Counted from the stretch's first letter, positions 1,232 to 50,742 are shown. The stretch is DNA of 50,931 nucleotides from Octopus sinensis (GCF_006345805.1 NW_021834159.1:1-50931); one strand, 5' to 3'. Notes: a model not told the origin generated them from the sequence alone. A program made the numbers and translations.

Positions 1232-2024
1232 CTAGCGGTCTCATATGAAAATGACCCTAGTATCGACCTATTACATTTTAATCTATTTTAGGGTTAGGGT
1301 TTGAGTTAGGGTTAGTTAGGGTTAGGTGGAGGCGCAATGGCCCAGTGGTTAGGGCAGCGGACTCGCGGTCATAGGATCGCGGTTTCGATTCCCAGACCGG
1401 ACATTGTGAGTGTTTATTGAGCGAAAACACCTAAAAGCTCCACGAGGCTCCGGCAGGGGATGGTGGTGATCCCTGCTGTACTCTTTCACCACAACTTTCT
1501 CTCACTCTTACTTCCTGTTTCTGTTGTACCTGTATTTCAAAGGGCCGGCCTTGTTGTCACTCACTGTGTCACGCTGAATATCCCCGAGAACTACGTTAAG
1601 GGTACACGTGTCTGTGGAGTGCTCAGCCACTTACACGTTAATTTCACGAGCAGGCTGTTCCGTTGATTCGGATCAATCGGAACCCTCGTCGTCGTAACCG
1701 ACGGAGTGCTTCCTTATAGTTAGGGTTAGGGGAAGGGTATCTTTTTTTCTTCAGAAATGTAAATAAACCCAATCTGTTTCTTAAACGAGGGACATTTTCA
1801 TATGGCACAGAATGTTTTCACTTCAATAGACGTCATTGATTGGTTGAAATTGCAGAAATTGAAGAAGAAAAAACAACAAATATCTTACAAACTATTGAAT
1901 TTTCTCAATAAAGCCAAGAGAAAAAGATGTTTTATAAACACATTCTACCAGTATACGAAGTTTAAAAGTGTTTAGTTACGTGGAAATTATAAAAAAAAAA
2001 CTGCCGTTCAAACCGAAGAGATCC
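1232..2024 (+). mobile_element. Non-autonomous TIR element (GGATCT family, copy 1) with TTAGGG-like tract, interrupted by a SINE
   Basis: Reverse-complement homolog of 5836-6255 along its length. Right TIR aactgccgttcaaaccgaagagatcc ends at 2024; left TIR is degraded. TTAGGG-like units at about 1288-1326 and 1717-1730. Confidence 0.8.
1327..1716 (+). mobile_element. tRNA-derived SINE, family A, full length
   Basis: A box TGGCCCAGTGG and B box GGTTTCGATTCCC; 14-bp TSD tagttagggttagg at 1313-1326 and 1717-1730; near-identical to 6863-7205 and 9812-10198. Confidence 0.92.
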
Positions 2025-3142: not shown

Positions 3143-3570
3143 GAGTGGCTGTGTGGTAAGTAACTTGTTTACCAGCCACATGGTTTACCAACCACATGGT
3201 TCCGGGTTCAGTCCCACTGCGTGGCACCTTGGGCAAATGTCTTCTACTATAGCCTCGGGCCGACCAAAGCCTTGTGAGTGGATTTGGTTGACGGAAACTG
3301 AAAGAAGCCCGTCGTATATATGTATATATATATATATGCGTGTGTGTGTTTGTGTGAGTGTGTTTGTTCCCCTAGCATTGCTTGACAACCGATGCTGGTG
3401 TGTTTATGTCCCCGTTACTTAGCGGTTCGGCAAAAGAGACCGATAGAATAAGTACTGGGCTTACAAAAGAATAAGTCCCGGGGTCGTGTTGCTTGATTGA
3501 AGGCGGTGCTCCAGCATGGCCGCAGTCAAATGACTGAAACAAGTAAAAGAGTAAAAGAGTAAAAGAGAGT
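3143..3570 (+). mobile_element. tRNA-derived SINE, family D (internal TA/TG microsatellite), inserted in the right foldback arm
   Basis: Head gagtggctgtgtggtaag...ggttccgggttcagtccc; tail ...gactgaaacaag followed by (taaaagag)n; removing it restores arm symmetry. Confidence 0.9.
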
Positions 3571-4999
3571 AAAAGATGTTTTATATGACACATTCTACCA
3601 GTGTCCGAAGTTTGAAAGTGTTTAGTTACAAAAAATTATTTTTTAAAATCTGTAGGTCAAAAGGTAAAGCTTCAGTATACTTTTCTCTCTCTTGTTATCC
3701 TTGTGACTACTACATCGAAGCAGTTGCAGCTATGTCACCACTTCTGTCATATAGCATCTCTCTTGTATACTTCTGGCAAACGATCTGTTCTTCGCCCTTC
3801 GCTTAAGTCTTCACTCTCATACTTTTCTCCAGATTACTTTGGTGTCTGTTGAAACTGCATCAGGTTCACTCTTGAACACTGTTTGTGTCGTCTGTAATTG
3901 GTCTTCCTTCATCTGGCCATCAGTTTTTCCCCCAAAAAAGAAAAGCTTCACTTTGTAATCTGTCCGTCTGTGTGCAGCCCTGCGTGGCTAATAAAGAAAC
4001 ATATTTTGCATTGAATTGGGGCCACAACCTTATCCAAATCTATCACAGCATGTTTCATGGATAAATGAAAAAAAAAAAAAAACCATGGTTATTTTCCCAA
4101 ATGCCGAATTCTTCAAGAAACTATTCTTCAAAAATTTCACAAAATCCCATTTGTAGAGTTACCTAAGCATGGATATTGCACGTGTGTGTGTAAACACATG
4201 TTATTTGGCTTTCAATTTAAAAGAAACTAGTAGTTGTAAGTTGCGATATTTCAGCTCTAAAATGATTAGCCTAAACTCTGTCTCTTGTATCGTGTACTTT
4301 TTCAACAAGTTTCTGAACACAAGTGTTTATCAATTATACACTAGCATGAACAATCTCTCTTAATGATAGCGTATTTAGCATTTGTATCTGGTGATTATTA
4401 ACTGTGTGTTTTGTGTGTATGCATGTATGTATGTATGTGCATTTATTTATGTATATATATATTCTGTCCATAGAAAGAAAAATGAGTTTGCTTACCATTG
4501 TCAAATACGTCAACGGCAAGTGACAGCGATATATCCACATATAATTATTAGCAATGTGTATTCATTTGCTGTCAAGGTAAGGAGATAGTGCTGAAGTAGG
4601 AGGTTGTCAAACGACAAGTGGCGAGTGAGTGAGTGACAGTTGGAGAAATAAAATGAAAGTGAGTGTAAGGCTGAGGTGCTTAGCACACTGTCCTGGCTGA
4701 TAAATTAAGGAAAAACTGAAAGAGAGTGAAAGTATATAAACGAATGTGGAGTGGAGTCAACTTTATGTTGTTTTAAGCAGGACGACAAATAGGAACTGCC
4801 TTAACCATCCTGGTAAATACGATGGGGAAACAGGAGAAAAACAAAACATGCTGTTTTACAAAGGAGTATTGTGATAAGTGAATTTCTGTATAATGCTAAG
4901 CTTGAGATGACTTTATTGTAAATATTGTCTCACATTTTTAATCAATTTTTATCACTATAGGCACAGACAATATTGGAAGTGAATGATACTGCTCATATG

Positions 5000-7205: not shown

Positions 7206-7401
7206 ATTAGAGGAGGTCACCGGTTTGGGGATTCCTTCATCTTTACATCCACTAATCTTGGAGACCTGCAAAAGAAAGCCATAGGCACTACCCACTTCCC
7301 TTCTGATTATATATATTTATACAAGCAGGAGGACTGGGTTTCACTCGGAGTATAAACTCATAGCCATAACACAGTAATCTGTACTTGTAGTGTAATTTAA
7401 C

Positions 7402-7634
7402 TATTTCTTTACTACCCACAAGGGGCTAAACATAGAGGGGGACAAACAAGGACAGACAAACGGATTAAGTCAATTACATCGACCCCAGTGCGTAACGGGT
7501 ACTTAATTTATCGACCCCGAAAGGATGAAAGGCAAAGTAGACTACGGCGGAATTTGAACTCAGAACGTAACGGCAGACGAAATACGGATACGCATTTCGT
7601 CCGGCGTGCTAACGTTTCTGACAGCTCGCCACCT
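7402..7634 (-). mobile_element. tRNA-derived SINE, family B (CORE-like body), monomer
   Basis: 24-bp TSD tctgtacttgtagtgtaatttaac at 7378-7401 and 7635-7658; body contains the GCCTTTCATCCTTTCGGGGTCGATAAATTAAGTACC motif. Confidence 0.92.
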
Positions 7635-8952: not shown

Positions 8953-9353
8953 CGAAGCGCATGGCTAAATGGTTAGGCGGCGAGCTAGCAGAAACGTTAG
9001 CACGCCGGGCGAAATACTTAGCGGTATTTCGTCTGCGTTACGTTGTGAGTTCAAATTCCGCCGAGGTCGACTTCGCCTTTCATCCTTTCGGGGTCGATAA
9101 ATTAAGTACCAGTTACGCACTGGGGTCGATGTAATCGACTTAATACCTATGTCTGTCCTTGTTTGTCCCCTCTGTGTTTAGCCCCTTGTGGGTAATAAAG
9201 AAATAGGTTAGGGTGTTGCATCAATGATCGTAAAATTATGGTTTCGATTCCTGGACCGAATGTATGGTGTTCTTTTCTCCTTGCTCCAGTCCATTCAGCT
9301 AAAAAAAAATGCTGCAATGGACCGGATTCGCACCCGGGAGCTGTGGGACTGGA

Positions 9354-10239: not shown

Positions 10240-11665
10240 GCAGGAGGTTTTTGAGGACAAATTTGGTAATTTAGTTGAACAATTTTAATTCAGCACAAAC
10301 CAAATGGGTTTTAATAAAAAATTCCATGCAGGACCGAGATCGTTGACATACCTGCAATAAATGGACTTCATCTGGACAATGGCGGTCTTCGGTGATATTA
10401 TGTTATTGTGAGGACGTCAATTATCCACCCCTTTTTAGCAATACTCCAAACGTAGTAGTCCTTGGTTTTGGATCTGGTGAATTTGGAGGTCACAAGTTTG
10501 GTAGTAAATGGTTGTAAAGATTTTCTGACATTTTTTCGCAGGCTGCCTGGGCTGTGTGATAACGTGCTGAGTCTTGTTATAAATTCATTCAGGGTTTAAC
10601 AACTGTCTCTAGCGCTTCAACGTATCTAGAAGCATTAGCTCTAAGACCCTGTGGAAATATGCAAAGTGGCATGGCATGACTTTCATTACTCACCTATTTC
10701 TTTACTACCCACAAGGGGCTAAACACAGAGGGGACAAACAAGGACAGACAAACGGATTAAGTCGATTATATCGACCCCAGTGCGTAACTGGTACTTATTT
10801 AATCGACTCCGAAAGGATGAAAGACAAAGTCGACCTCGGCGGAATTTGAACTCTGAACGTAGTGGCAGACGAAATACCTATTTCTTTATTACCCACAAGG
10901 GGCTAAACATAGAGGGGACAAACAAGGACAGACATAGGTATTAAGTCGATTATATTGACCCCAGTTCGTAACTGGTACTTAATTTATCGACCCCGAAAGG
11001 ATGAAAGGCAAAGTCGACCTCGGCGGAATTTGAACTCTGAACGTAGTGGCAGACGAAATACCGCTGAGCATTTCGCCCGGCGTGCTAACGATTCTGCCAG
11101 CTCACCACCTTAAATTACTTTCATTACTCACCATCACAGTTGCTGGACATTTAGTGCGCAATCGCTCTGGTGACATCAGAAGAATCAGCCCACAGCCATC
11201 TTTTGGTCTTGGTCAAATTTATCCTCATCAGAGAAAAAACAAAGAATGCTATGCCCATCAGAGGTTCAAAAATTGTTAAGTAACCGCTTGGAATGGATCA
11301 AGCGGTTTTTCCTGAATTTGCAGACATGAACTGACCGCTCCTGATGCCATACGAGCTGTATCGAATATCCTCGGGCACCGTAGTTCTGAGAGTCCACTCC
11401 GACACATGAAGTTTTTTTAGTGATGACCTTCATTCATTTTTTTCCGGGTTTATCCCCGATCATGTTTTAAAACCCGTTGGATGAATTGCGGTGTCCTTAT
11501 GTTTGAACTTTTAAAGTGGTTTTTGAAACATTTCCGCCAAAATCTTCCATTTCCATCGTAGCTTTTGTGTGCGAAAGATCTTGCGGTGTTTAGAAAGTCA
11601 GCAATTTCTAAATCACCATTTTTCGCACATATAGCAGTTTATGACTGCATGTCTCTTTATTTGCC
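10240..11665 (-). pseudogene. Decayed Tc1/mariner transposase, DD37D (maT-like)
   Basis: Minus-strand translation across frameshifts gives KRHAVI, GDLEIADFL, RTPQFIQRV, HVSEWTLRTTVPEDIRY, FFSDE, PATVMVSNE, FPQGLRANASRYVEALETVVKP, QDSARYH, L*PPNSPD-(1-nt deletion)-DYYVWS. Counting from QD to the restored PLD gives 37 residues. Confidence 0.85.
10695..11116 (-). mobile_element. Family B SINE dimer inserted in the mariner fossil
   Basis: Two bodies joined at gacgaaatacc|tatttcttt; single 16-bp TSD actttcattactcacc at 10679-10694 and 11117-11132. Confidence 0.92.
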
Positions 11666-12016: not shown

Positions 12017-12191
12017 GGCGCTGGTGTGGTTGTGTGGTAAGCAGCTTGCTTTCCAACCACATGGTTCCGGGTTCACTCCTACTGAGTGATACCTTGGCCA
12101 AGTGTTTTCTACTATAGCCTTGGATCGACCAAAGCCTTGTGAGTAGATTTGGTTGACGGAAACTAAAAGAGGCCCGTCGTATATATATATA

Positions 12192-12224
<33 letters not shown>

Positions 12225-12303
12225 ATAGATAGATAGATAGATATACATATATATATATAGAGAGATAGATAGATATACATATATATATATAATATATATA
12301 TAT

Positions 12304-12336
<33 letters not shown>

Positions 12337-12735
12337 TATAATACATATATTATATATATATATATATATAGATAGATAGATAGATATACATTATATATAT
12401 ATATAGATAGATAGATATACATATATATATATAGATAGATAGATAGACATATATATATATAGATAGATAGATAGATAGATAGATAGACATATATATATAT
12501 ATAGATAGATAGATAGATATATATGTATATATATATTATATATATATAGAGAGAGAGAGAGATAGATAGATATAAGTGTGTATGTGTGTGTGTTACGTCC
12601 CCGTAACTTTGCGGTTCGTCAAAAGATACCGATATAATAAGTACTGGGGTCGATTTCTTCGACTAAAACTCTTCAAGGCAGTGCTCCAGCATGGCCACAG
12701 TGAAATGGCTGAAACAAGTGAAAGAATAAAAGAAT
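12017..12735 (+). mobile_element. Family D SINE with a greatly expanded TA/GATA compound microsatellite (about 12178-12580)
   Basis: Head ggcgctggtgtggttgtgtggtaag, tail gaaacaagtgaaagaataaaagaa; same layout as 3143-3570. Confidence 0.88.
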
Positions 12736-13240: not shown

Positions 13241-13792
13241 AGGCGATGAGTTGGCAGAAACGTTAGCACGCCGGGCGAAATGCTTAGCCGTATTTCGTCT
13301 GTCTCTACGTTCTGAGTTCAAATTCCGCCGAGGTCGACTTTGCCTTTCATCCTTTCAGGTTCGATAAATTAAGTACCAGTTACGCACTGGGGGTCGATAT
13401 AATCGGCTTAATCCGTTTGTCAGTCCTTGTTTGTCCTCTCTGTGTTTAGCCCCTTGTGGGTAGTAAAGAAATAGGTATTTTGTCTGCCGTTACGTTGTAA
13501 GTTCAAATTCCGCCGAGGTCGACTTTGACTTTTATCCTTTCAGGGTCGATAAATTAAGTACCAGTTACGCACTGGTGTCGATGTAATCGACTTAATTCCT
13601 TTATCTGTCCTTGTTTGTCCACTCTATGTTTAGCCCCTTGTGGGTAGTAAAGAAATATGTATTTCGTCAGTTGCCGTGTTCTGAGTTCAAATTCCGCCGA
13701 GGTCGACTATGCATTTCATCCTTTAGGGGCCGATCTAATCGACTGGCTCCCCTCCCCCAAAATTTCAGGCCTTGTGCCTAGAGTAGAAAAGG
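13241..13792 (+). mobile_element. Family B SINE trimer; third unit has the alternative aggccttgtgcctagagtagaaaag tail
   Basis: One full head, then bodies restarting after aaagaaata at about 13475 and 13657. Confidence 0.88.
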
Positions 13793-13884: not shown

Positions 13885-14158
13885 TTTTATCTTTCATCTT
13901 TTACTTGTTTCAGTCAATAGACTGCGGCTATGCTGGGGCACCGTCTTGAAGAATTTTAGTCGAACATATCGACCCCAGTACATATAGTTTTCAGAAGCCT
14001 GGTGCTTATTCTATCGCCCTATTTTTCCGAACCGCTAAGTTACGAGGACGTAAACACCAGTATCGGCAGTCAAGCAGTGGGTAGGGGGCAAGCACAGACA
14101 CAAAGATACACACAAACATCTTATATAATAAAAGAAAGTTTGTGTGTGTGTGTGTGCG
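13885..14158 (-). mobile_element. Family D SINE, 3' half
   Basis: cttttacttgtttcagtc...gaaccgctaagttacgaggacgtaaacacc matches the reverse complement of the family D tail. Confidence 0.8.
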
Positions 14159-23266: not shown

Positions 23267-23424
23267 TTTCTTTATTACCCATAAGGGCCTAAACACAGAG
23301 GGGACAAACAAGGACAGACAAACAAATTAAGTCGATTACATCGACCCCCAGTGCGTAACTGGTACTTAATTTATCGACCTCGAAAGGATGAAAGGCAAAG
23401 TCGACCTCAGCGGAATTTGAACCC
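23267..23424 (-). mobile_element. Family B SINE, 5' truncated
   Basis: tttctttattaccc...ggatgaaaggcaaagtcgacctc. Confidence 0.85.
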
Positions 23425-23656: not shown

Positions 23657-23946
23657 TGGTTCAGTCCCACTGCGTGGCACCTTGGGCAAGTGTATTCTAC
23701 TATAGCCTCAGGCCTACTAAAGCCTTGTGAGTGGATTTAGTAGAAGGAAACTGAAAGAAGCCTGTCGTATATATGTATATGTATGTGTGTGTGTGTGTTT
23801 GTCCCCCCCAACATCGTTTGACAACCGATGCTGGTGTGTTTACGTCCCCATAACTTAGTGGTAGAATAAGCACTAGGCTTACAAAGAATAAATCCTGGGG
23901 TGCTCCAGCATGGCCGCAGTCAAATGACTGAAACAAGTAAAAGAGT
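23657..23946 (+). mobile_element. Family D SINE, 5' truncated
   Basis: tggttcagtcccactgcgtggc...gactgaaacaagtaaaagagt. Confidence 0.85.
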
Positions 23947-25450: not shown

Positions 25451-25647
25451 TTGTTTGTCTGTGCGTGTCCCCACCAACATCGCTTGACAACCGATGTTGG
25501 TATGTTTACGTACCCGTAACTTAGCGGTTCAACAAAAGAGACCGATAGAATAAGTACTAGGCTTACAAAGAATAAGTCCTGGGATCGACTTGCTCGACTA
25601 AAGGTGGTGATCCAGTATGGCCGCAGTCAACTGACTGAAACAAGTCA
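25398..25647 (+). mobile_element. (TG)n tract plus family D SINE 3' half
   Basis: cttgacaaccgatg...ttagcggttc...ctgactgaaacaag. Confidence 0.82.
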
Positions 25648-26312: not shown

Positions 26313-26654
26313 GTTTGCAAATCAACGACGACGATGACGACGATGAACTACTTAGATCTTGATGGTCTCAGCTGTCTTGTTAGTGATAGGGTCCTGAGAT
26401 ACCATTGATCTAGCTCGTTGCTTGATACTACGTCAATACGGACATCTGCTTTTGCCCAATATATAACCACGCCTTTCTGTGGAGGACGCTTACGATAAGC
26501 TGATGCTGTATCTAGGATTACACAGTTTCAATTTCTATTTAGTCTTGCCAAATGACAACAACAATAATGATAACAACAACAAAAACAACAATAATTGTTT
26601 CAGATTTTGGCACAAGGTCAGCAACTTCGGGGTAGGAAGTATGTCGATAACATT

Positions 26655-26915
26655 GATGATGATGACGATGATGACGATGATGATGATGATGATGATGACG
26701 ATGACGATGACGATGATGATGACGATGATGATGACGATGATGACGATGATGATGACGATGACGATGATGATGATGACGATGATGATGAGGATGATGATGA
26801 CGATGACGATGATGACGATGATGATGATGATGATGACGATGATGATGACGATGACGATGATGATGACGATGACGATGACGATGATGATGATGATGATGAC
26901 GACGACGACGACGAC
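26655..26915. repeat. (GAT/GAC)87 trinucleotide repeat
   Basis: 261 bp of uninterrupted GAN triplets (GAT/GAC with one GAG); generates the poly-D/M/S/H/I ORFs of the track. Confidence 0.95.
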
Positions 26916-30825: not shown

Positions 30826-31345
30826 GTGGAGGCGCGTGGCTTAGTGGTAAGGGTGTCAGCATCATGATCGTAAGATTGTGGTTTCGATTCCTGGACCGGG
30901 CGATGCGTTGTGTTCTTGAGCAAAACACTTCATTACACGTTGCTCCAGTCCACTCAGCTGGCAAAAATGAGTAATCACGCAATGGACTGGCGTCCCGTCC
31001 AGCTGGGGAACACATACGCCATTGAAACCGGGAAACCGGGTCCAAGAGCCTGGTTAGGCTTTAAAAGGGCGCATTTATTATTTGTGGAGGCACGTTGCTT
31101 AGTGGTTAGGGTGTCAGCATCATGATCGCAAGATTGTGGTTTCGATTCCTGGACCGGGCGATGCGTTGTGTTCTTGAGCAAAACACTTCATTACACGTTG
31201 CTCCAGTCCACTCGGCTGGCAAAAGTGAGTAACACTGCGATGGACTGGCGTCTCATCCAGCTGGGGAACACATACGCCATTGAAACCGGGAAACCGGGAC
31301 CATGAGCCTGGCTAGGCTTTAAAAAAGGCGCATTTATTTATTATA
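30826..31345 (+). mobile_element. Family C SINE tandem dimer with one TSD pair
   Basis: Two near-identical full monomers (second starts at about 31083); 13-bp TSD taagagtaaaacg at 30813-30825 and 31346-31358. Confidence 0.92.
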
Positions 31346-32281: not shown

Positions 32282-32650
32282 TCTTTTTTACTCTCTTACA
32301 TGTTTCAGTCATTTGACTGAGGCCATTCTGGAGCACCGCCTTTAGTCGAGCAAATCGACTCCAGGACTTATTCTTTGTAAGCCTAGTACTTATTCTATCG
32401 GTGTCTTTTGGCGAACCGCTAAGTTACGGTGACGTAAACACACCAGCATCGGTTGTCAAGCGATGTTGGGGGGACAAACACAGGCACACAAACATACACA
32501 CACACAGACATATATATAATCCACTCACAAGTCTTTGGTCGACTCGAGGCTATAGTAGAAGACACTTGCCGATGGTGCCACGCAGTCGGACTGAACCCGG
32601 ACCCATATGGTTCGCATATAAGCTACTTACCACACAGCCACTCCTACGCC
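32282..32650 (-). mobile_element. Family D SINE, near full length
   Basis: tgtttcagtcatttgactg...ccacacagccactcctacgcc. Confidence 0.88.
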
Positions 32651-33882: not shown

Positions 33883-34276
33883 TGGTTTCAAATTATGCTA
33901 CAAGGGCAGCAATTTTTGGGGAGGAGATGAGTCAATTACATCGACCCCAGTGTTCAACTGGTACTTATTTTATTGACCCTGAAAGGATGACAAGTAAAGT
34001 CCACTTCCGTGGAATCTGAACTCAGAACATAGCGACGAGCGAAATACCTATTTCTTTACTACCCACAAGGAGCTAAACACAGAGAGGACAAACAAGGACA
34101 GACAAACGGATTTAGTCGATTTTATCGACCCCAGTGCGTAACTGGTACTTATTTAATCGACCCCGACAGGATAAAAGGCAAAGTGGACCTCGGCGGAATT
34201 TGAACTCAGAACGTAGCGGCAGACGAAATACCGCTAAGCATTCCGTCCAGTGCGCTGACGGTTCTGCCAGCTCGCC

Positions 34277-34372
<96 letters not shown>

Positions 34373-35655
34373 GTTTCAAATTTTGGTACAAGGCCAGAAG
34401 TTTCAAGGAGGGGCTAAGTCGATTATATCGACCCCAGTGATCATCTGGTACTTATTTTATCGACCCCGACCCCGAATGGATGAAAGGCAAAGCCGATTCA
34501 TCGGAATTTGAATTCAGAATGAAAACACGGGCGAGATGCTGTCAAGCATTTTGTTGGGTGTGGTAACGATTCTACTCACTCTCCAATAATAATTCTTTCT
34601 AACTTTTGGCACAAGACCAGCAATTGAAGGGGGAGGGGTAAGTTGATTACATCGACCCCCAGTGCGCTCAACTGGTACTTGTTTAGTCGACCCCCGAAAG
34701 AATGAAAGATAAAATCGGCCTCGGAGAGATTTTAGCTTAGCATGTAAAAAGCCAGAAAATACTATTAAGCGTTTTGTCTAGTGTGCTAACGATTCGCCCA
34801 GCTAGCCAATAATAATTCTAATCCTTACACAAGGCCTGAAAATTGTGCGAAGGTGGCTAATCGATTACATTGATCCCAGTGTTTAACTGGTACTTATTTC
34901 ATCGACTCCGAAAAGATGAAAGGCTAAGTCGACCTTGTTGAGATTTGAACTTAGAACATATAGAGACCCAGAAGAAAAGTCGCTAGGCAATTTATTCGAT
35001 TCACTAACGCTTCTTATTTCTTTATTGCCACAAGGGGCTAAACATAGAGGAGACAAACAAGGAGTGACAAAGGGATTAAGTCGATTACATCGACCCCATT
35101 GCGTGACTGGTACTTAATTTATCGACCCCGAAACGATGAAAGGCAAAGTCGACCTCGGCGGAATTTGAACTCAAAACGTAACGGCAGACGAAGACAGACG
35201 AAATACCTATTTCTTTATTACCCACAAGGGGCTAAACATAGAGGGGACAAACAAGGACATACATAGGTATTAAGTCGATTACATCGACCCCAGTGCGTAA
35301 CTGGTGCTTAATTTATCGACCCCGAAACGATGAAAGGCAAAGTCGACCTCGGCGGAATTTGAACTCACAACGTAACGGCAGACGAAATACCTATTTCTTT
35401 ACTACCCACAAGGGGCTAAACACAAAGGGGACAAACAAGGACAGACAAATGGATTAAGTCGATTACATCGACCCCAGTTCGTATCTGGTACTTAATTTAT
35501 CGACCCCGAAAGGATGAAAGGCAAAGTCGACCTCGGCGGAATTTGAACTCACAACGTAACGGCAGACGAAATACCGCTAAGCATTTCGCCTGGCATGCTA
35601 ACATTTCTGCCAGCTCACCACTAAGCATTTCACCCGGCGTGCTAACGTTTCTGCC
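33883..35655 (-). mobile_element. Pile of about eight family B SINE units, all on the minus strand, with (AAT)n linkers
   Basis: Units at about 33883, 34047, 34372, 34595, 34815, 35012, 35207 and 35391, each with the cgaccccagt...tggtactta...gaaaggatgaaaggc core. Confidence 0.9.
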
Positions 35656-38094: not shown

Positions 38095-38500
38095 AGGCAG
38101 TGAGCTGGTAGAATCGTTAGCACAGCGGACGAAATGCTTAGCGGCATTTCGTCTGCCTCTACGTTCTGAGTTCAAATTCTGCCGAGGTCAGCTTTGCCTT
38201 TCATACTTTCGGGGTCGATAAATTAAGTAGCAGTTACGCCCTGGGGTCGATGTAATCGTCTTAATCCCTTTTTCTGTCCTTGTTTGTCCCCTCTATGTTT
38301 AGCCCCTTGTGGGCAATAAAAAAATAAGAATCGTTATTATTCTGGGCGAAATGCTTAGCAACATTGTCCTTACGTTTTGAGTTCAAATTCCGCCGAGGTC
38401 GACTTTGCCTTTAATCCTTTCGAAGTCGATAAAATAACTACCAGCTGAACACCTTAATCCCTTCTCCGAAACTACTGACCTTGTGCCAAAATTTGAAACC
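38095..38500 (+). mobile_element. Family B SINE dimer; second unit has the ttgtgccaaaatttgaaacc tail
   Basis: Two ctgagttcaaatt...gaggtc cores in tandem. Confidence 0.87.
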
Positions 38501-42716: not shown

Positions 42717-42747
42717 CGTAGAGTAAAAAGACTCGTAACTAAATACC

Positions 42748-43165
42748 TATTTCTTTACTACCCACAAGGGGCTAAACACAGAGAGGGACAAACGAGGACA
42801 GACAAAGGGATTAAGTCGATTACATCGACCCCTGTGCATAACTGGTACTTAATTTATCGACCCCGAAAGGATGAAAGGTAAAGTCAACCTCGGCGGAATT
42901 TGAACTCAGAACGTAGCGGCAGACGAAATACCTATTTCTTTACTACCCACAAGGGGCTAAACACAGAGGGGACGAACAAGGACAGACAAACGTATTAAGT
43001 CGATTATATCGACCCCAGTGCGTAACTGGTACTTATTTAATCGACCCCGAAAGGATGAAAGGCAAAGTCGACCTCGGCGGAATTTGAACTCAGAACGTAA
43101 CGGCAGACGAAATACCGCAAAGCATTTCGCCCGACGTGCTAACGCGTCTGCCGGCTCACCGTCTT
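42748..43165 (-). mobile_element. Family B SINE dimer
   Basis: 16-bp TSD ctcgtaactaaatacc at 42732-42747 and 43166-43181. Confidence 0.92.
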
Positions 43166-44900: not shown

Positions 44901-44934
44901 CCACCTGTCTGCATAACTTTGAATCTCATATACC

Positions 44935-45322
44935 TATTTCTTTACTACCCACAGAGGACAAACAAGGACAGACAAACGGATTAAGTCGATTACATCGACC
45001 CCAGTGTGTAACTGGTACTTATTTAATCGACCCCGAAAAGATGAAAGGCAAAGTCGACCTCGGCGGAATTTGAACTCAGAACGTAGCGGCAGACGAAATA
45101 CCTATTTCTTTACTACCCACAAGGAGCTAAACACAGAGAGGAGAAACAAGGACAGACAAACGGATTAAGTCGATTACAGCGACCCCAGTGTGTTACTGGT
45201 ACTTATTTAATCGACCCCGAAAGGATGAAAGGCAAAGTCGACCTCGGCGGAATTTGAACTCAGAACGTAGCGGCAGACGAAATACCGCTAAGCATTTCGC
45301 CCGGCGTGCTAACGTTTCTACC
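44935..45322 (-). mobile_element. Family B SINE dimer, 5' end clipped
   Basis: Same gacgaaatacc|tatttcttt junction at about 45100; no TSD seen. Confidence 0.88.
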
Positions 45323-46222: not shown

Positions 46223-46569
46223 CTATCTATATCTATCTATCCACACAACACAAACACACCAACACAATATATATATATAAACATGAAGTCTTTAGTGACA
46301 TGCCAGTGATAATAAATAATTAGCAACAAACATTTTTAGTCGCACACACATATTTTCGACGCAAATTTTCAATTATTAATACAATTCGAAATTAAAAATA
46401 GCACCTGCATAACTTGAAGTAGCATTAAATTGTGTTAGACGTGTGTGTTGGTCGGTAAGGTGTGAGTGTTAGCATCTACGAGCGCTTGTGTCGTTGCGTG
46501 AGAGTTATATATATTTGTATGTATGTGTGTGTGTATATTTATATACATATATATTAATATATACATACA

Positions 46570-46611
<42 letters not shown>

Positions 46612-46667
46612 CATATATATATATATATATATACATACATATACATATATATATATAATAATATATA

Positions 46668-46703
<36 letters not shown>

Positions 46704-47115
46704 TATACATACATATACATATTAACTATATATATATATATATATATATACAACATTATATATACAAATATATACATACATATATATACTATATACATAC
46801 ATATATATACATACATAACATATATACATCATTATATATATATATATATATAATATATATATTACATACATATACATATATATTAATATATCATACATTA
46901 TATACAACATTTATTATAAATAATATATACATATATATATATATATAATATATATCTATATATATTATATATATATAGATAGATACATACATATATATAC
47001 ACACAAACGCCGCAGTCATTCACACTTACATTTGTGCATACATACATACACACATACATGCATACATACATACATACATACATACATACATACACACATA
47101 CATACATTTATATAT
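45830..47115. repeat. Large compound TA/TG/TCTA/TACA microsatellite field
   Basis: Direct reading; interrupted by unique sequence at about 46270-46510; source of about ten spurious ORFs. Confidence 0.9.
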
Positions 47116-47312
47116 AGGGCGGCTCTTAAGCTAGTATATAGCTTTTAAGCAACTAACCCTGAACGGGAAGATCTGCAAACAGATCTCTGACTTGTTTTGG
47201 AGAATTGGTTGCAATTGCTTCCTCCTGAGTCATATCCCCCAATGATGATCATATTCATTGCAATAACTCGAGCAAAAAAAAAAAATAAATAAAAAATAAA
47301 GAAAGAAAAAGG

Positions 47313-47720: not shown

Positions 47721-48108
47721 GCGACGAGTTGGCAGAATCGTTTGGACGCTGGGCGAAAGGCTTACCGGTATTTCATCTGCCATTACGTTCTGCGTTCTAA
47801 TTCCGCCGAGGTCGACTTTGCCTTTCATCCTTTCGGGGTCGAAAAATTAAGTACCAATTACACACTGGGGTCGATGTGATCGACTTAATCCCTTTGTCCT
47901 TGTTTGTCCCCTCTACGTTTACCCCCTTGTGGACAATAAAGAAATAAGAATCTTTAGCGGCCGTAAGGTTTAGAGTTCGAATTCCGCCGAGGTCGACTTT
48001 GCTTTTCATCTTTTCGGGGTTGATAAAATTAGTACCAATTACGTACTGTGGTCAATATAATCGACTTAATCCCTTCCCCAAACAGGCTTAGTGCTTCTAG
48101 TAGAAAGT
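47721..48108 (+). mobile_element. Family B SINE dimer
   Basis: gcgacgagttggcagaatcg head; second core after aaagaaataagaa. Confidence 0.85.
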
Positions 48109-48620
48109 ATTTATTAATGTTGAAAATGTGTGACACGTTCACATTTAGTATACTAGCTATGTTTAATTTTGGGGAAACTTTATTTCAATTAAAGTGTGTG
48201 TGTATGTATATATATTTGTATTAAAGAAAGCAAAAAATAAAACAAAATTATAGTTCCCACTGCCACCATCAACACTACTTCTTTTATAAAACATTATCAG
48301 CTCTCCATAAATTTCTTTGTCTCTTTTTCTCTCCCTCGCTTTCTCTCTCTGTCTGTCTTCACTACCGCCCTCACCATCTCTATGCCTATTATTACTCTCA
48401 CCCCATCATGAAGAATTGTAGGAGTGTCATTGAATTGTGAGAGAAGGGAGTTCTAAGTGTGACACACTGACACACAGAAATTAGATTTCGCATGTGGGTG
48501 GAAAGTAACTGAGCATTAGAAATTGCTTATAGGATTTTTAGCATCACTGAAGTCATGACGAAAACATTGATGGGGTTTCTTATTTTCTTATTGTCTCGTT
48601 TCTTATTTCTTCTACTCCCG

Positions 48621-50109
48621 ATAGCCAGTCGCTTAACTGTTCAGGTGCGAGCTAAGATAACAGCACGCTATGAAGCGTGGAATTCCATTGTTTTGGTTCA
48701 GAGATGGTCGCGTGCATGGAAAGGTAATCGTGCAACACTACATCCGCAGACAATAAAAAGTTGTCATGCAAAGCTGATGACCACGGGCTCTGTTGATCCA
48801 TGCAAGAAGTGGCTGGCTGTCCAACCACATCCCGATCAGCGGAGAACGTGGCAACAGTGCTGGAAATGCTTAATCGCAGCCCGCAAAAATCAACACGTCA
48901 AGCAGCTCGGGTAAGTGGACTAACAAGACACACAATACGTACGGTGTTGCATAAGGAATTGAATTTTCGTCTGTGGAAATCCCATTACGTGCAGGAGCTA
49001 AAACCTGAAGACTGTGACCGCAGTTCACAGGGCCAAAATGTACAGATCTCACTCCATGTGATTTTTACCTGTGGGTTACACAAAAGACTGTGACCACAGT
49101 TCACAGGGCCAAAATGTACAGATCTCACTCCATGTGATTTTTACCTGTGGGTTACACAAAAGACTGTGACCACAGTTCACAGGGCCAAAATGTACAGATT
49201 TCACTCCATGTGATTTTTACCTGTGGGTTACACAAAAGACTGACCACAGTTCACAGGGCCAAAATGTACAGATCTCACTCCATGTGATTTTTACCTGTGG
49301 GTTACACAAAAGACTGTGACCACAGTTCACAGGGCCAAAATATACAGATCTCACTCCATGTGATTTTTGCCTGTGGTTTACACAAAAGACTGTGACCACA
49401 GTTCACAGGGCCAAAATGTACAGATCTCACTCCATGTGATTTTTACCTTTGGGTTACACAAAAGACTGTGACCACAGTTCACAGGGTCAAAATGTACAGA
49501 TCTCACTCCATGTGATTTCTACCTGTGGATTACACAAAAGACTGTGACCACAGTTCACAGGGCCAAAATGTACAGATCTCACTCCATGTGATTTCTACCT
49601 GTGGGTTACACAAAAGACTGTGACCACAGTTCACAGGGCCAAAATGTACAGATCTCACTCCATGTGATTTTTACCTGTGGTTTACACAAAAGACTGTGAC
49701 CACAGTTCACAGGGCCAAAATGTACAGATCTCACTCCATGTGATTTTTACCTGTGGGTTACACAAAAGACTGTGACCACAGTTCACAGGGCCAAAAAGTA
49801 CAGATCTCACTCCATGTGATTTTTACCTGTGGTTTACACAAAAGACTGTGACCGCAGTTCACAGGGCCAAAATGTACAGATCTCACTCCATGTGATTTCC
49901 ACCTGTGGGGTTACTCAAAAGAGGAGGTGTACAAGACAAAACCTCGCACACTGGAGGACTTGCAGACACGGATTCAGGAGGTTCTCAATGATATTCCAGA
50001 CGACGTCTTTCAGAAGATTGTTCATTCCATCCTTGGCAGTTTGAGGAAACTGGTTGACGCCACAGGTGCTTACGTTGAAATACGAAGATTCACTTTAGAA
50101 CAGTACTAA
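48621..50109 (+). pseudogene. Internally deleted Tc1/mariner transposase pseudogene
   Basis: ATA GCC AGT CGC (probable mutated start) RLTVQVRAKITARYEAWNSIVLVQRW...KLMTTGSVD, frameshift, GCPTTSRSAENVATVLEMLNRSPQKSTRQAARVSGLTRHTIRTVLHKELNFRLWKSHYVQELKPEDCDR (HTH region); C-terminus CGGYSKEEVYKTKPRTLEDLQTRIQEVLNDIP...GAYVE, stop at 50109. Confidence 0.9.
49008..49917 (+). repeat. 76-bp minisatellite, 12 units, inside the transposase
   Basis: Unit aagactgtgaccacagttcacagggccaaaatgtacagatctcactccatgtgatttttacctgtgggttacacaa. Starts at 49008, 49084, 49160, 49236 (74 bp), 49310, 49386, 49462, 49538, 49614, 49690, 49766 and 49842. Confidence 0.97.
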
Positions 50110-50237
50110 TCAAGTGAAGAACGAATATATAGTGCGTGTGTCTGTGACCACCCCGAAATACAACAATAACTGTTTCAACACACGGTCTCACATCTGGAAT
50201 CTTTCAACACAAATTCATAAACGTGTATATATTATTT

Positions 50238-50410
50238 TATTCTGTTACTTGTTTCAGTCATATGACTGCGGCCATGATGGAGCACCGCCTTTAGTCGAAC
50301 TAATCGACCCCAGGACTAATTCTTTGTAAGCCTAGTACTTATTCTATCGTCTTTTTTGCCGAACCGCTAAGTTACGGGGACATAAAGCCTGTTACCACAC
50401 AGCCACACCT
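50238..50410 (-). mobile_element. Family D SINE, internally deleted
   Basis: Tail gttacttgtttcagtc...aagttacggggacataa joined directly to the head ttaccacacagccacacc. Confidence 0.8.
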
Positions 50411-50614
50411 ATATATAAAGGATAGAAAGACATAGGCATGACTGTGTTGTTAAGAAGTTCTATGCATAACCACATCGTTCCATGTTCGATCCATTTACCG
50501 ATATTTTCGACAGATGTTTTCTAATTATCTTTTCTGTTATAGTCACGCGGCCTGGAATTTTATGGGGATGGGAAATAAGCAATTTCATTGCTCCTAGCCC
50601 TCAACTAGTAATTA

Positions 50615-50742
50615 TCTCACCTACCCAAAAGGATGAAAGGCAAAGTCAAACTTGGCAGTATTTGAACGCGGAACGTAAAGACTTGCAAAATAACGCTAAG
50701 CATTTTCCCCGACGTGCTAACGATTCTGCCATCTCGCCACAT
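50615..50742 (-). mobile_element. Degraded family B SINE
   Basis: aaaggatgaaaggcaaagtc...gtgctaacgattctgcc. Confidence 0.72.

What the first reader, a model, noticed from the sequence alone, without database searches (positions are those of the whole stretch)
49008..49917. A mariner transposase whose catalytic core was replaced by a minisatellite made from its own third-aspartate motif
Seen: the HTH half ends at ...ELKPEDCDR and the C-terminal helix region resumes at GY.KEEVYKTKP. Between them lie 12 near-identical 76-bp units, each encoding D-L-T-P-C-D-F-Y-L-W (gatctcactccatgtgatttttacctgtgg). Established: SPDLxPxDF.LWG carries the last catalytic residue of Tc1/mariner DDD/E enzymes, and the first two aspartates (xSDE, QQD) should lie upstream; they are absent here. 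Seen: each unit begins with aagactgtgacc, copied from the pre-deletion EDCD codons. Only the first and last units have gaccgcag, and only the last keeps ctgtggggttact (the in-frame LWGY). Upstream gaagac and downstream aaagag share aaga. Inference: an internal deletion created a new junction, then microhomology-primed slippage or rolling amplification produced a young array. This would be satellite birth from a coding catalytic motif, and possibly a mobile carrier of that satellite. Because 76 is not a multiple of 3, a coding role is unlikely.
Basis: partly seen in the sequence, partly recalled or inferred. Interest (0 to 1): 0.8.

Follow-up and report, generated by a model that had tools for sequence, protein, structure and literature searches.

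The report
Dead transposon with self-derived minisatellite
A decayed cut-and-paste transposon copy in what looks like a cephalopod genome lost its catalytic core, and the 77-bp stretch spanning the deletion scar was then copied head-to-tail 12 times; this is a clean example of a process already well known, not a new kind of element.

Summary
Window 49008-49918 holds 12 head-to-tail units (eleven of 76/74 bp, the last of 77 bp) at 96% identity. They sit between the HTH half (48621-49023) and the C-terminal tail (to 50083) of a Tc1/mariner-superfamily transposase remnant.

Intact relatives (351-362 aa) show the family is DD41D/VS, not DD34D mariner proper. About 140 codons carrying the first two catalytic Asp are missing.

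Each unit is chimeric. Nt 1-16 are the EDCDRR codons of the N side. From about nt 17-25 onward the unit is the C side (GP[H]KC[PPRS]T-DLTPCDFYLWGYTK), including the third catalytic Asp codon. All 12 units share the same scar, so one deletion came before or with the amplification. The duplicated segment is bounded by a 4-nt AAGA microhomology. The edge units keep ancestral bases (G13, GGGG), as expected for arrays grown by unequal exchange.

"Satellite birth" and "mobile carrier" are not. No other copy of the unit was found anywhere I could search, and the source genome was not available. No 3' TIR is recognisable; a SINE sits where it should be.

Tandem arrays derived from transposons, including from Tc1/mariner elements and from transposase ORFs, are documented. 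Interest is low to moderate.

The parts
48491..48515 (+). 5' terminal inverted repeat of the element (CATGTGGGTGGAAAGTAACTGAGCA)
   Evidence: Matches the 26-bp TIR CAGGGTGGTTGAAAAGTAACTAGGCA of the intact relative in L002, where both TIRs are present at about 2855-2881 and 4220-4246. It occurs once in the window.
48621..49023 (+). N-terminal HTH half of the DD41D transposase (corresponds to aa 10-143 of P0001), decayed. ATA replaces the start ATG at 48621-48623, there is a frameshift between 48797 and 48812, and it ends ...YVQELKPEDCDR(R).
   Evidence: tblastn of P0001 gives aa 10-68 at 48621-48797 and aa 73-154 at 48812-49057 in another frame. blastn is 78.7% over 395 bp to L002:3036-3428. 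Translation. Pfam gives only sub-threshold HTH hits.
49008..49918 (+). Minisatellite of 12 units. Unit 4 is 74 bp, the other ten of units 1-11 are 76 bp, and unit 12 (49842-49918) is 77 bp. Each unit is N-side nt 1-16 (AAGACTGTGACCRCAG), then the deletion scar, then the C side (GPKCT-DLTPCDFYLWGYTK codons).
   Evidence: TRF, unit table, and alignments to intact relatives.
49023..49032 (+). Deletion scar as seen in unit 1, repeated at the same phase in all 12 units. The N-side sequence ends at ...GACCGCAG and the C-side sequence starts within the next few nt (TTCACAGGGCC).
   Evidence: The N-side match to L001 and L002 stops after GCAG, where relatives continue AATGGA. The C-side match is firm from GGGCC onward. 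The exact breakpoint is uncertain by a few nt.
49919..49922 (+). AAGA microhomology at the 3' edge of the array. Its partner at 49008-49011 is the first 4 nt of unit 1.
   Evidence: Sequence read directly. The chance of this 4-mer from window base composition is about 0.0055.
49879..50083 (+). C-terminal tail of the transposase in frame, from DLTPCDFHLWGYSKEEVYKTKP... to ...AYVEI (aa 295-362 of P0001). The original stop is replaced by CGA at 50084-50086.
   Evidence: tblastn gives aa 286-362 at 49852-50082. blastn is 85.6% to A. pharaonis L001:10204-10383. Translation.
50233..50330 (+). 5' part of an unrelated SINE-like repeat that occupies the place where the 3' TIR is expected. It is not part of the element but explains the missing end.
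   Evidence: Seven copies in the window share TTTTACTCTTTTACTTGTTTCAGTCATTTGACTGCGGCCATG.... No 3' TIR with 6 or fewer errors lies downstream.

Best explanation
A copy of a DD41D/VS (Tc1/mariner superfamily) DNA transposon, most likely in an octopod cephalopod genome, suffered one internal deletion of about 140 codons (about 420 bp, roughly aa 144-283 in P0001 numbering). The deletion removed the first two catalytic aspartates. It joined the linker codons EDCDRR to the stretch just upstream of the third-aspartate motif.

A 77-bp segment spanning that scar, bounded on both sides by AAGA, was then duplicated in tandem. The likely mechanism is microhomology-mediated slippage, template switching or unequal exchange. 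The array then grew to 12 units by unequal exchange or replication slippage.

During growth, a variant carrying G13>A and a 1-bp loss in the G run (77 to 76 bp) took over the interior, while the edge units kept ancestral bases. The array is non-coding and has no demonstrated function. It is a locus-specific minisatellite inside a dead, probably immobile element.

Shown here: the anatomy, the homology of both unit parts, the shared scar, the microhomology and the edge-unit pattern. Inferred: the order of events, the enzymology of the duplication, and neutrality.
For: 1. Array: 12 units at 96% identity.
2. Family: 13 intact relatives have a D2-D3 spacing of 41. The D of TPCDF aligns with SB100X E279 and WSDE/MQDG with D153/D244.
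3. Core absent: tblastn of the intact 362-aa P0001 finds only aa 10-154 and 286-362 in the window.
4. Chimeric unit: nt 1-16 are identical to the N flank and match L002 at 15/16. Nt 36-76 are 91% identical to L002:3881-3926 and nt 25-76 are about 80-81% identical to A. pharaonis L001.
5. C-side reading: the C frame reads GPKCTDLTPCDFYLWGYTK against GPHKCPPRSSDL...FLWGYTKEE in the A. pharaonis model P0034.
6. Order of events: the same scar and the same two small in-frame gaps (3 and 12 nt) are present in all 12 units, so these preceded or accompanied amplification.
7. Microhomology: AAGA lies at both array edges, about 0.0055 by chance.
8. Edge-unit pattern: G13 occurs only in units 1 and 12, matching GACCGCAG in relative L001. 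GGGG occurs only in unit 12, matching the relatives. Unit 12 is the most divergent, with 5 differences against 0-3 for the others.
9. Decay of the host copy: the start is ATA, there is one frameshift, and the stop is lost.
10. Precedent: microhomology-mediated internal deletion of Tc1/mariner elements (PMC3814204) and TE-derived tandem arrays (PMC12628747, PMC9659126).
Against: - No intact copy from the same species was available. The deletion breakpoint is therefore only placed to within a few nt, and its own microhomology cannot be judged.
- The order "deletion, then duplication" cannot be separated from a single complex repair event.
- Unit number rests on one assembly, and no reads were available.
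- Uniqueness of the locus is untested in the source genome. The collections I searched probably do not contain that genome.
- The shared variants at non-adjacent units (T69 in units 5, 9, 11; C58 in units 7, 8, 12) are not explained in detail.
Confidence: 0.8

Rival explanations
1. One-step origin. The deletion and the first tandem duplication arose together during abortive gap repair (synthesis-dependent strand annealing with template switching) after the element was excised. Later growth followed as in the main model.
For: All units share one scar and the array sits exactly at the scar. Short homologies lie at both the scar region and the array edges. Interrupted gap repair is the accepted route to internally deleted cut-and-paste elements (own knowledge; PMC3814204 for Tc1/mariner miniaturisation).
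Against: Nothing in the sequence requires simultaneity. Two small in-frame gaps (3 and 12 nt) inside the C-side part are shared by all units, which suggests the deleted copy, or its source, had time to change before amplification.
Confidence: 0.15
2. The unit is part of a dispersed family: a non-autonomous, scar-bearing element carrying a variable internal array (like Xenopus miDNA4) or an independent satellite. The window then shows just one member.
For: Deletion derivatives of this transposase family that keep the HTH and the C tail do multiply elsewhere. P0012, P0013, P0016, P0022 and P0030 share one junction, QELT|RWLGRRGPHEW. Octopus bimaculoides XP_014768905 (P0002) has the same N+C architecture. 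This genome readily makes short tandem arrays of TE units.
Against: There is no second copy of the unit in the 51-kb window, in JGI metagenome contigs, or among 5.8 billion predicted proteins searched with unit-specific frames. P0002's junction (CES|RTPRRPDL, about CDR|WPPRSPDL) differs from the one here. This copy has no recognisable 3' TIR. None of these searches covers the source genome, so the negative result is weak.
Confidence: 0.1
3. Assembly artefact. The true locus has one or a few units, and the assembler inflated the array.
For: Tandem arrays are error-prone in assemblies, and no reads were available here.
Against: The units are not identical. There are 14 variable columns, including a 2-bp deletion in unit 4 and distinct edge units that join seamlessly to unique flanks. 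The array is only 911 bp and easily spanned by single long reads.
Confidence: 0.04
4. The array is a pre-existing satellite, unrelated to the transposase, that was captured by or inserted into the element.
For: Capture was proposed for the Xenopus miDNA4 array (as summarised in PMC12628747).
Against: Both parts of the unit align to the transposase gene of intact relatives. The first and last units are continuous with the flanking coding sequence in the right frames.
Confidence: 0.01

Closest known systems
miDNA4, a Tc1/mariner MITE of Xenopus tropicalis carrying an internal satellite as one monomer or as a variable array (Scalvenzi and Pollet, as summarised in PMC12628747 and Table 1 of PMC9659126)
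   Same: Both are non-autonomous Tc1/mariner-superfamily elements with a head-to-tail array inside the element. In both, short direct repeats or microhomologies at the array edges are invoked for expansion.
   Different: miDNA4 is a multi-copy mobile family, and its authors proposed capture of a pre-existing repeat. Here a single copy is known, the 3' TIR is missing, and the unit is demonstrably made from the element's own coding sequence across a deletion scar.
Satellite or tandem repeats derived from TE open reading frames (Table 1 of PMC9659126). Examples: CficCl-61-40 from the Tnp2 transposase of a CACTA element in Chenopodium; PROsat and Pvc20 from LINE-1 ORF2; HinfI from CR1 ORF2.
   Same: The tandem unit descends from TE protein-coding sequence that no longer codes.
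   Different: Those are abundant, genome-wide satellites. This is a 12-unit, 0.9-kb minisatellite at one locus.
Microhomology-mediated miniaturisation of a Tc1/mariner element into MITEs in Aedes aegypti (PMC3814204)
   Same: An internal deletion of a Tc1/mariner element removes the catalytic region, with short homologies involved.
   Different: No tandem amplification of the scar is part of that story. Those derivatives kept both TIRs and multiplied.
DD41D/VS family of Tc1/mariner transposons (PMC6875036, PMC8472432)
   Same: Intact relatives of the remnant have the DD41D spacing and are 338-362 aa long. The intact copy examined (L002) has about 26-bp TIRs.
   Different: The window copy has lost D1 and D2. 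Placement in a tree with reference VS sequences was not done.

Membership tests
Tc1/mariner superfamily, DD41D/VS family (ancestry of the remnant) | Catalytic triad D, D, D with 41 residues between the second and third | tested here: met
   Met in 13 intact relatives of the remnant (50-68% identical to it): D2-D3 spacing is 41 and D1-D2 is 87-89. The triad positions were fixed by alignment to SB100X. The window copy itself keeps only the third D codon.
Tc1/mariner superfamily, DD41D/VS family (ancestry of the remnant) | Complete transposase (HTH DNA-binding half plus DDD core) in this copy | tested here: not met
   About aa 144-283 are absent from the element and from the window. The start is lost, there is a frameshift, and the stop is lost. 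It is a remnant, not a functional member.
Tc1/mariner superfamily, DD41D/VS family (ancestry of the remnant) | Terminal inverted repeats at both ends and a TA target-site duplication | tested here: inconclusive
   The 5' TIR is present at 48491-48515. No 3' TIR with 6 or fewer errors was found, and a SINE occupies the expected place. The TSD cannot be read.
Tc1/mariner superfamily, DD41D/VS family (ancestry of the remnant) | Phylogenetic grouping with reference VS/rosa transposases | not tested
   No reference sequences were at hand. The assignment rests on the spacing signature only.
mariner proper (DD34D) | 34 residues between the second and third catalytic Asp | tested here: not met
   The spacing is 41 in all intact relatives. 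Mos1 and SETMAR match only weakly, at E 7e-7 to 1e-3.
TE-derived internal minisatellite | Head-to-tail array lying inside the element | tested here: met
   12 units at 49008-49918 lie between the two transposase halves.
TE-derived internal minisatellite | Unit homologous to the element's own sequence | tested here: met
   Both unit parts align to the transposase gene of L002 and L001.
Satellite DNA in the classical sense | Many long arrays, high genomic abundance | not testable with these tools
   The source genome is not available. Only one 0.9-kb array was seen, and there were no hits.
Mobile non-autonomous element carrying a satellite (miDNA4-like) | Several insertions with both TIRs and a variable unit number | not testable with these tools
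   The source genome is not available. This copy lacks a recognisable 3' TIR, which argues against current mobility of this copy.

The most novel reading that the evidence does not exclude
The scar-spanning unit is not confined to this locus. It would be the founder of a dispersed or mobile tandem-repeat family in this cephalopod genome: a Tc1/mariner deletion derivative that carries and spreads a satellite made from its own third-Asp coding motif. Its origin would be traceable to the base pair.
Probability: 0.08. Interest if true: 0.5.

Novelty: new member of a known kind. Interest (0 to 1): 0.25.

Why it matters
It is a tidy, base-pair-resolved snapshot of how a tandem array can start from a transposon. 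It shows a single deletion scar, a 4-nt microhomology at the array edges, and ancestral edge units around a homogenised interior. That makes it a useful textbook-style illustration and a possible polymorphic marker.

It does not reveal a new mechanism. Arrays born from TEs, including from Tc1/mariner elements and from transposase or other TE ORFs, are already catalogued (PMC12628747, PMC9659126). It would matter more only if the unit proved to be spread through the genome.

Tried and rejected
1. A 3' TIR candidate at 50236-50256 aligned to the L002 3' TIR. I rejected it because that stretch is the conserved 5' end of a SINE-like repeat with 7 copies in the window.
2. A 19/20 match of 50575-50593 to the inner 5' TIR region lies next to a diverged copy of the 184-bp repeat (50603-50677). 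It reads as a continuation of that repeat, so I treat it as chance.
3. A weak ACCACCCC at 50147-50155 resembles the TIR tip but is too short to call.
4. A fuzzy search for either TIR with 6 or fewer errors found no 3' partner.
5. Two exact scans of JGI metagenome contigs found nothing. One used the third-Asp 30-mer and one used the unit-unit junction 29-mer.
6. A protein search with the unit translated in all frames found no protein at E of 10 or better.
7. Look-ups of two window ORFs and of Octopus bimaculoides P0002 found no record. The source assembly and the DNA of P0002 could not be fetched.
8. Pfam on the remnant halves, and even on intact relatives, gave only sub-threshold HTH hits. The family was assigned from the triad spacing instead.
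9. Single-strand folding of two units is not unusual (z = -1.28), so there is no support for a hairpin-driven mechanism.
10. No tRNA or Rfam family was found in the window.
11. I considered that the unit's first 16 nt might come from the C side, because GACTGTGACCGCA resembles GACGCGGACCTCA of the RRGPH codons at 10/13. I rejected this because they match the N side at 16/16.

Full report
**Observation**

Tandem Repeats Finder reports one array at 49008-49922 with period 76, 12.1 copies, 96% matches and score 1688.

Parsing the units gives 12 units from 49008 to 49918. Unit 4 is 74 bp (TG lost) and the other ten of units 1-11 are 76 bp. Unit 12 is 77 bp because it keeps GGGG where the others have GGG, GGT or GGA.

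GACCGCAG is found only in units 1 and 12. The array is preceded by CCTGAAGAC and followed by AAGAGGAGG.

**The host element**

Translation shows ...RLTVQVRAKITARYEAWNSIVLVQRW... and, after a frameshift...SAENVATVLEMLNRSPQKSTRQAARVSGLTRHTIRTVLHKELNFRLWKSHYVQELKPEDCDR running into unit 1. Another frame of unit 12 reads DLTPCDFHLWGYSKEEVYKTKPRTLEDLQTRIQEVLNDIPDDVFQKIVHSILGSLRKLVDATGAYVEI.

A protein search with the two halves joined found 67 relatives. Several intact 338-362-aa proteins are among them (P0001, P0003, P0004 and others).

In 13 intact relatives the motifs W[ST]DE, xQDG and PxDF[FY]LW give spacings of 87-89 and exactly 41. Alignment of P0001 to the Sleeping Beauty catalytic domain puts these three acidic residues on D153, D244 and E279. 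The family is therefore DD41D, called DD41D/VS in the literature (PMC6875036, PMC8472432). It belongs to the Tc1/mariner superfamily but is not DD34D mariner.

tblastn of P0001 against the whole window finds only aa 10-154 and 286-362. The catalytic core with D1 and D2 is missing here and anywhere nearby.

The copy is decayed:
- ATA stands where relatives have the start ATG (48621-48623).
- There is a frameshift between 48797 and 48812.
- The stop after ...AYVEI is replaced by CGA.

**Ends of the element**

The intact copy in locus L002 (an ENA contig) has 26-bp TIRs, CAGGGTGGTTGAAAAGTAACTAGGCA. The window has a clear 5' TIR at 48491-48515.

No 3' TIR is recognisable. The place where it is expected, about 120-160 bp after the ORF as in L001 and L002, is taken by a SINE-like repeat starting near 50233. 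That repeat has 7 copies in the window. An apparent match there to the L002 TIR was part of that repeat and was discarded.

**What the unit is made of**

DNA alignments to L002 (intact) and to two partial copies in Acanthosepion pharaonis (L001) show two parts.

- Unit nt 1-16 (AAGACTGTGACCRCAG) are the E-D-C-D-R-R codons of the linker after the HTH half. In unit 1 they are continuous with the N flank. They match L002 at 15/16 and share GACCGCAG with L001. After GCAG the relatives continue AATGGA (M-E), whereas the unit continues TTCACAGGGCC.
- From about nt 17-25 to nt 76 the unit matches the region just upstream of and through the third-Asp motif. Identity is 91% to L002:3881-3926 and about 80-81% to L001:13304-13360 and L001:10204-10259.

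In the C frame the unit reads (Q)FTGPKCTDLTPCDFYLW(G)YTQK. The A. pharaonis model P0034 reads PRGPHKCPPRSSDL..FFLWGYTKEE, and P0001 reads RRGPHEWPPRSPDLTPCDFYLWGYTKEE.

So the unit keeps roughly aa 284-308 of the ancestral protein, with two small in-frame gaps (H; PPRS). It includes the codon of catalytic D300. The deletion removed about aa 144-283, roughly 420 bp (numbering). The breakpoint is certain only to within a few nucleotides, because no intact copy from the same species was available.

**Order of events and mechanism**

All 12 units carry the same scar and the same two small gaps. These therefore existed before, or arose together with, the first duplication.

The duplicated segment is bounded by AAGA on both sides. 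One AAGA lies in GAAGAC of the EDCD codons and the other in AAAGAG of the TKEE codons. By base composition that 4-mer has a chance of about 0.0055. This fits microhomology-mediated slippage, template switching or unequal exchange for the founding duplication.

Unit 12 shows that the segment was originally 77 bp. The interior then became dominated by a variant with G13>A and a 1-bp shorter G run. Unit 1 keeps G13 and unit 12 keeps both G13 and GGGG, which are the states seen in relatives.

Unit 12 is also the most divergent unit, with 5 differences from the consensus against 0-3 for the others. Conserved-ancestral, poorly homogenised edge units are the expected signature of arrays that grow by unequal exchange (established knowledge about tandem repeats).

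Interior units differ from their consensus by about 1.4 positions on average (about 1.8%). The host copy is 15-22% diverged from its nearest available relatives, but those come from other species, so the array cannot be dated here. "Young" is plausible but not measured. I found no evidence for rolling-circle amplification.

**Coding or structure**

No reading frame stays open across the array on either strand. The longest ORFs lying wholly within the array are 32-60 codons, and 76 is not a multiple of 3. Two units folded as single-stranded DNA are not more stable than shuffles (z = -1.28). Nothing points to a function.

**Is it a satellite or a mobile carrier?**

I could not search the source genome. 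Within reach, every search was negative:
- no other copy of the unit in the window;
- none in JGI metagenome contigs with two different exact patterns;
- no predicted protein matching the unit-specific frames among 5.8 billion sequences;
- window ORFs not on record.

These negatives are weak, because the collections probably lack this genome.

Relatives show that deletion derivatives keeping the HTH and the C tail are common in this family. Five proteins share the junction QELT|RWLGRRGPHEW. Octopus bimaculoides XP_014768905 (P0002, 204 aa) joins EDCES to RTPRRPDL. That junction differs from the one here, so it is not evidence for a family with this scar. With the 3' TIR missing, this particular copy is unlikely to be mobile.

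**Source organism (inference)**

The nearest named proteins are from Octopus bimaculoides and A. pharaonis. The window copy shares RAWKG and IKSCH with the octopus proteins.

The dense SINE-like repeats of the window are absent from 23.5 kb of A. pharaonis. This points to an octopod rather than a cuttlefish. The identification is not proven.

**Comparison with what is known**

Tandem arrays and satellites born from transposable elements are well documented and recently reviewed (PMC12628747, PMC9659126).

- Closest case: miDNA4 of Xenopus, a Tc1/mariner MITE with an internal satellite present as one or many units, with microhomologies at the edges.
- ORF-derived satellites are also listed: CACTA Tnp2 transposase, LINE ORF2 and gag.
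- Microhomology-mediated internal deletion of a Tc1/mariner element is documented in Aedes (PMC3814204).

What is particular here is only the clarity. The unit straddles the deletion scar, contains the last catalytic codon, and both founding boundaries are still readable. I class it as a new member of a known kind.

**Verdict**

The wider claims of satellite birth and a mobile carrier are unsupported. Interest is 0.25.

Noticed in passing
window 7401-7583, 9026-9208, 10692-11059, 13292-13734, 23267-23422, 34046-34229, 35015-35572, 38146-38326, 42745-43113, 44932-45283, 47770-48075 and others: A 184-bp SINE-like unit gives 29 blastn hits in the 51-kb window. At six or more places it lies as exact head-to-tail dimers or trimers with period 184. 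Short tandem arrays of TE units therefore seem routine in this genome, which puts the 76-bp array in context.
   Followed up: partly
window 3515-3539, 12690-12714, 13908-13932, 23909-23933, 25616-25640, 32303-32327, 50252-50276: A second SINE-like family has the conserved 5' end TTTTACTCTTTTACTTGTTTCAGTCATTTGACTGCGGCCATGCTGGAGCACCGCC, with 7 copies. One copy sits where the transposon's 3' TIR should be.
   Followed up: partly
window 1288-1326 and 2847-2942: Interstitial telomere-like repeats lie in opposite orientation about 1.5 kb apart: (TTAGGG) about 7 copies and (AACCCT) about 11-15 copies.
   Followed up: no
window 30826-31338: A 258-bp unit is present twice in tandem (93% identity). Its start looks like a tRNA-derived SINE head (GGCTTAGTGGTAAGGG ... 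GGTTTCGATTCCTGGACC), but ARAGORN and Rfam call nothing in the window.
   Followed up: partly
proteins P0012, P0013, P0016, P0022, P0030, P0028, P0002 and window 49023-49032: Independent internal-deletion derivatives of this DD41D family in several organisms have their C-side breakpoint within about 10 codons of each other, inside RWLGRRGPHEW just upstream of the third-Asp motif. This could be a deletion hotspot, or a bias from how the hits were found (the query held only the two halves).
   Followed up: no
P0002 = Octopus bimaculoides XP_014768905.1: A 204-aa gene model has an uninterrupted ORF made of the HTH half fused to the C-terminal tail, without the catalytic core. It could be a TE remnant annotated as a gene or a retained truncated protein. 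Its DNA could not be fetched.
   Followed up: partly
L001 10001-13502 (Acanthosepion pharaonis CAHIKZ030005382.1): The gene model P0034 (237 aa) is stitched from two partial copies of the same transposon about 3.1 kb apart. Each copy ends with its own 3' TIR (about 10501-10527 and 13702-13728).
   Followed up: partly
window 12180-12548, 46534-47116, 26654-26899: There are very long simple repeats: (TA) about 189 copies, (TA)/(TATATACA) over about 580 bp, and (TGATGA) 41 copies.
   Followed up: no
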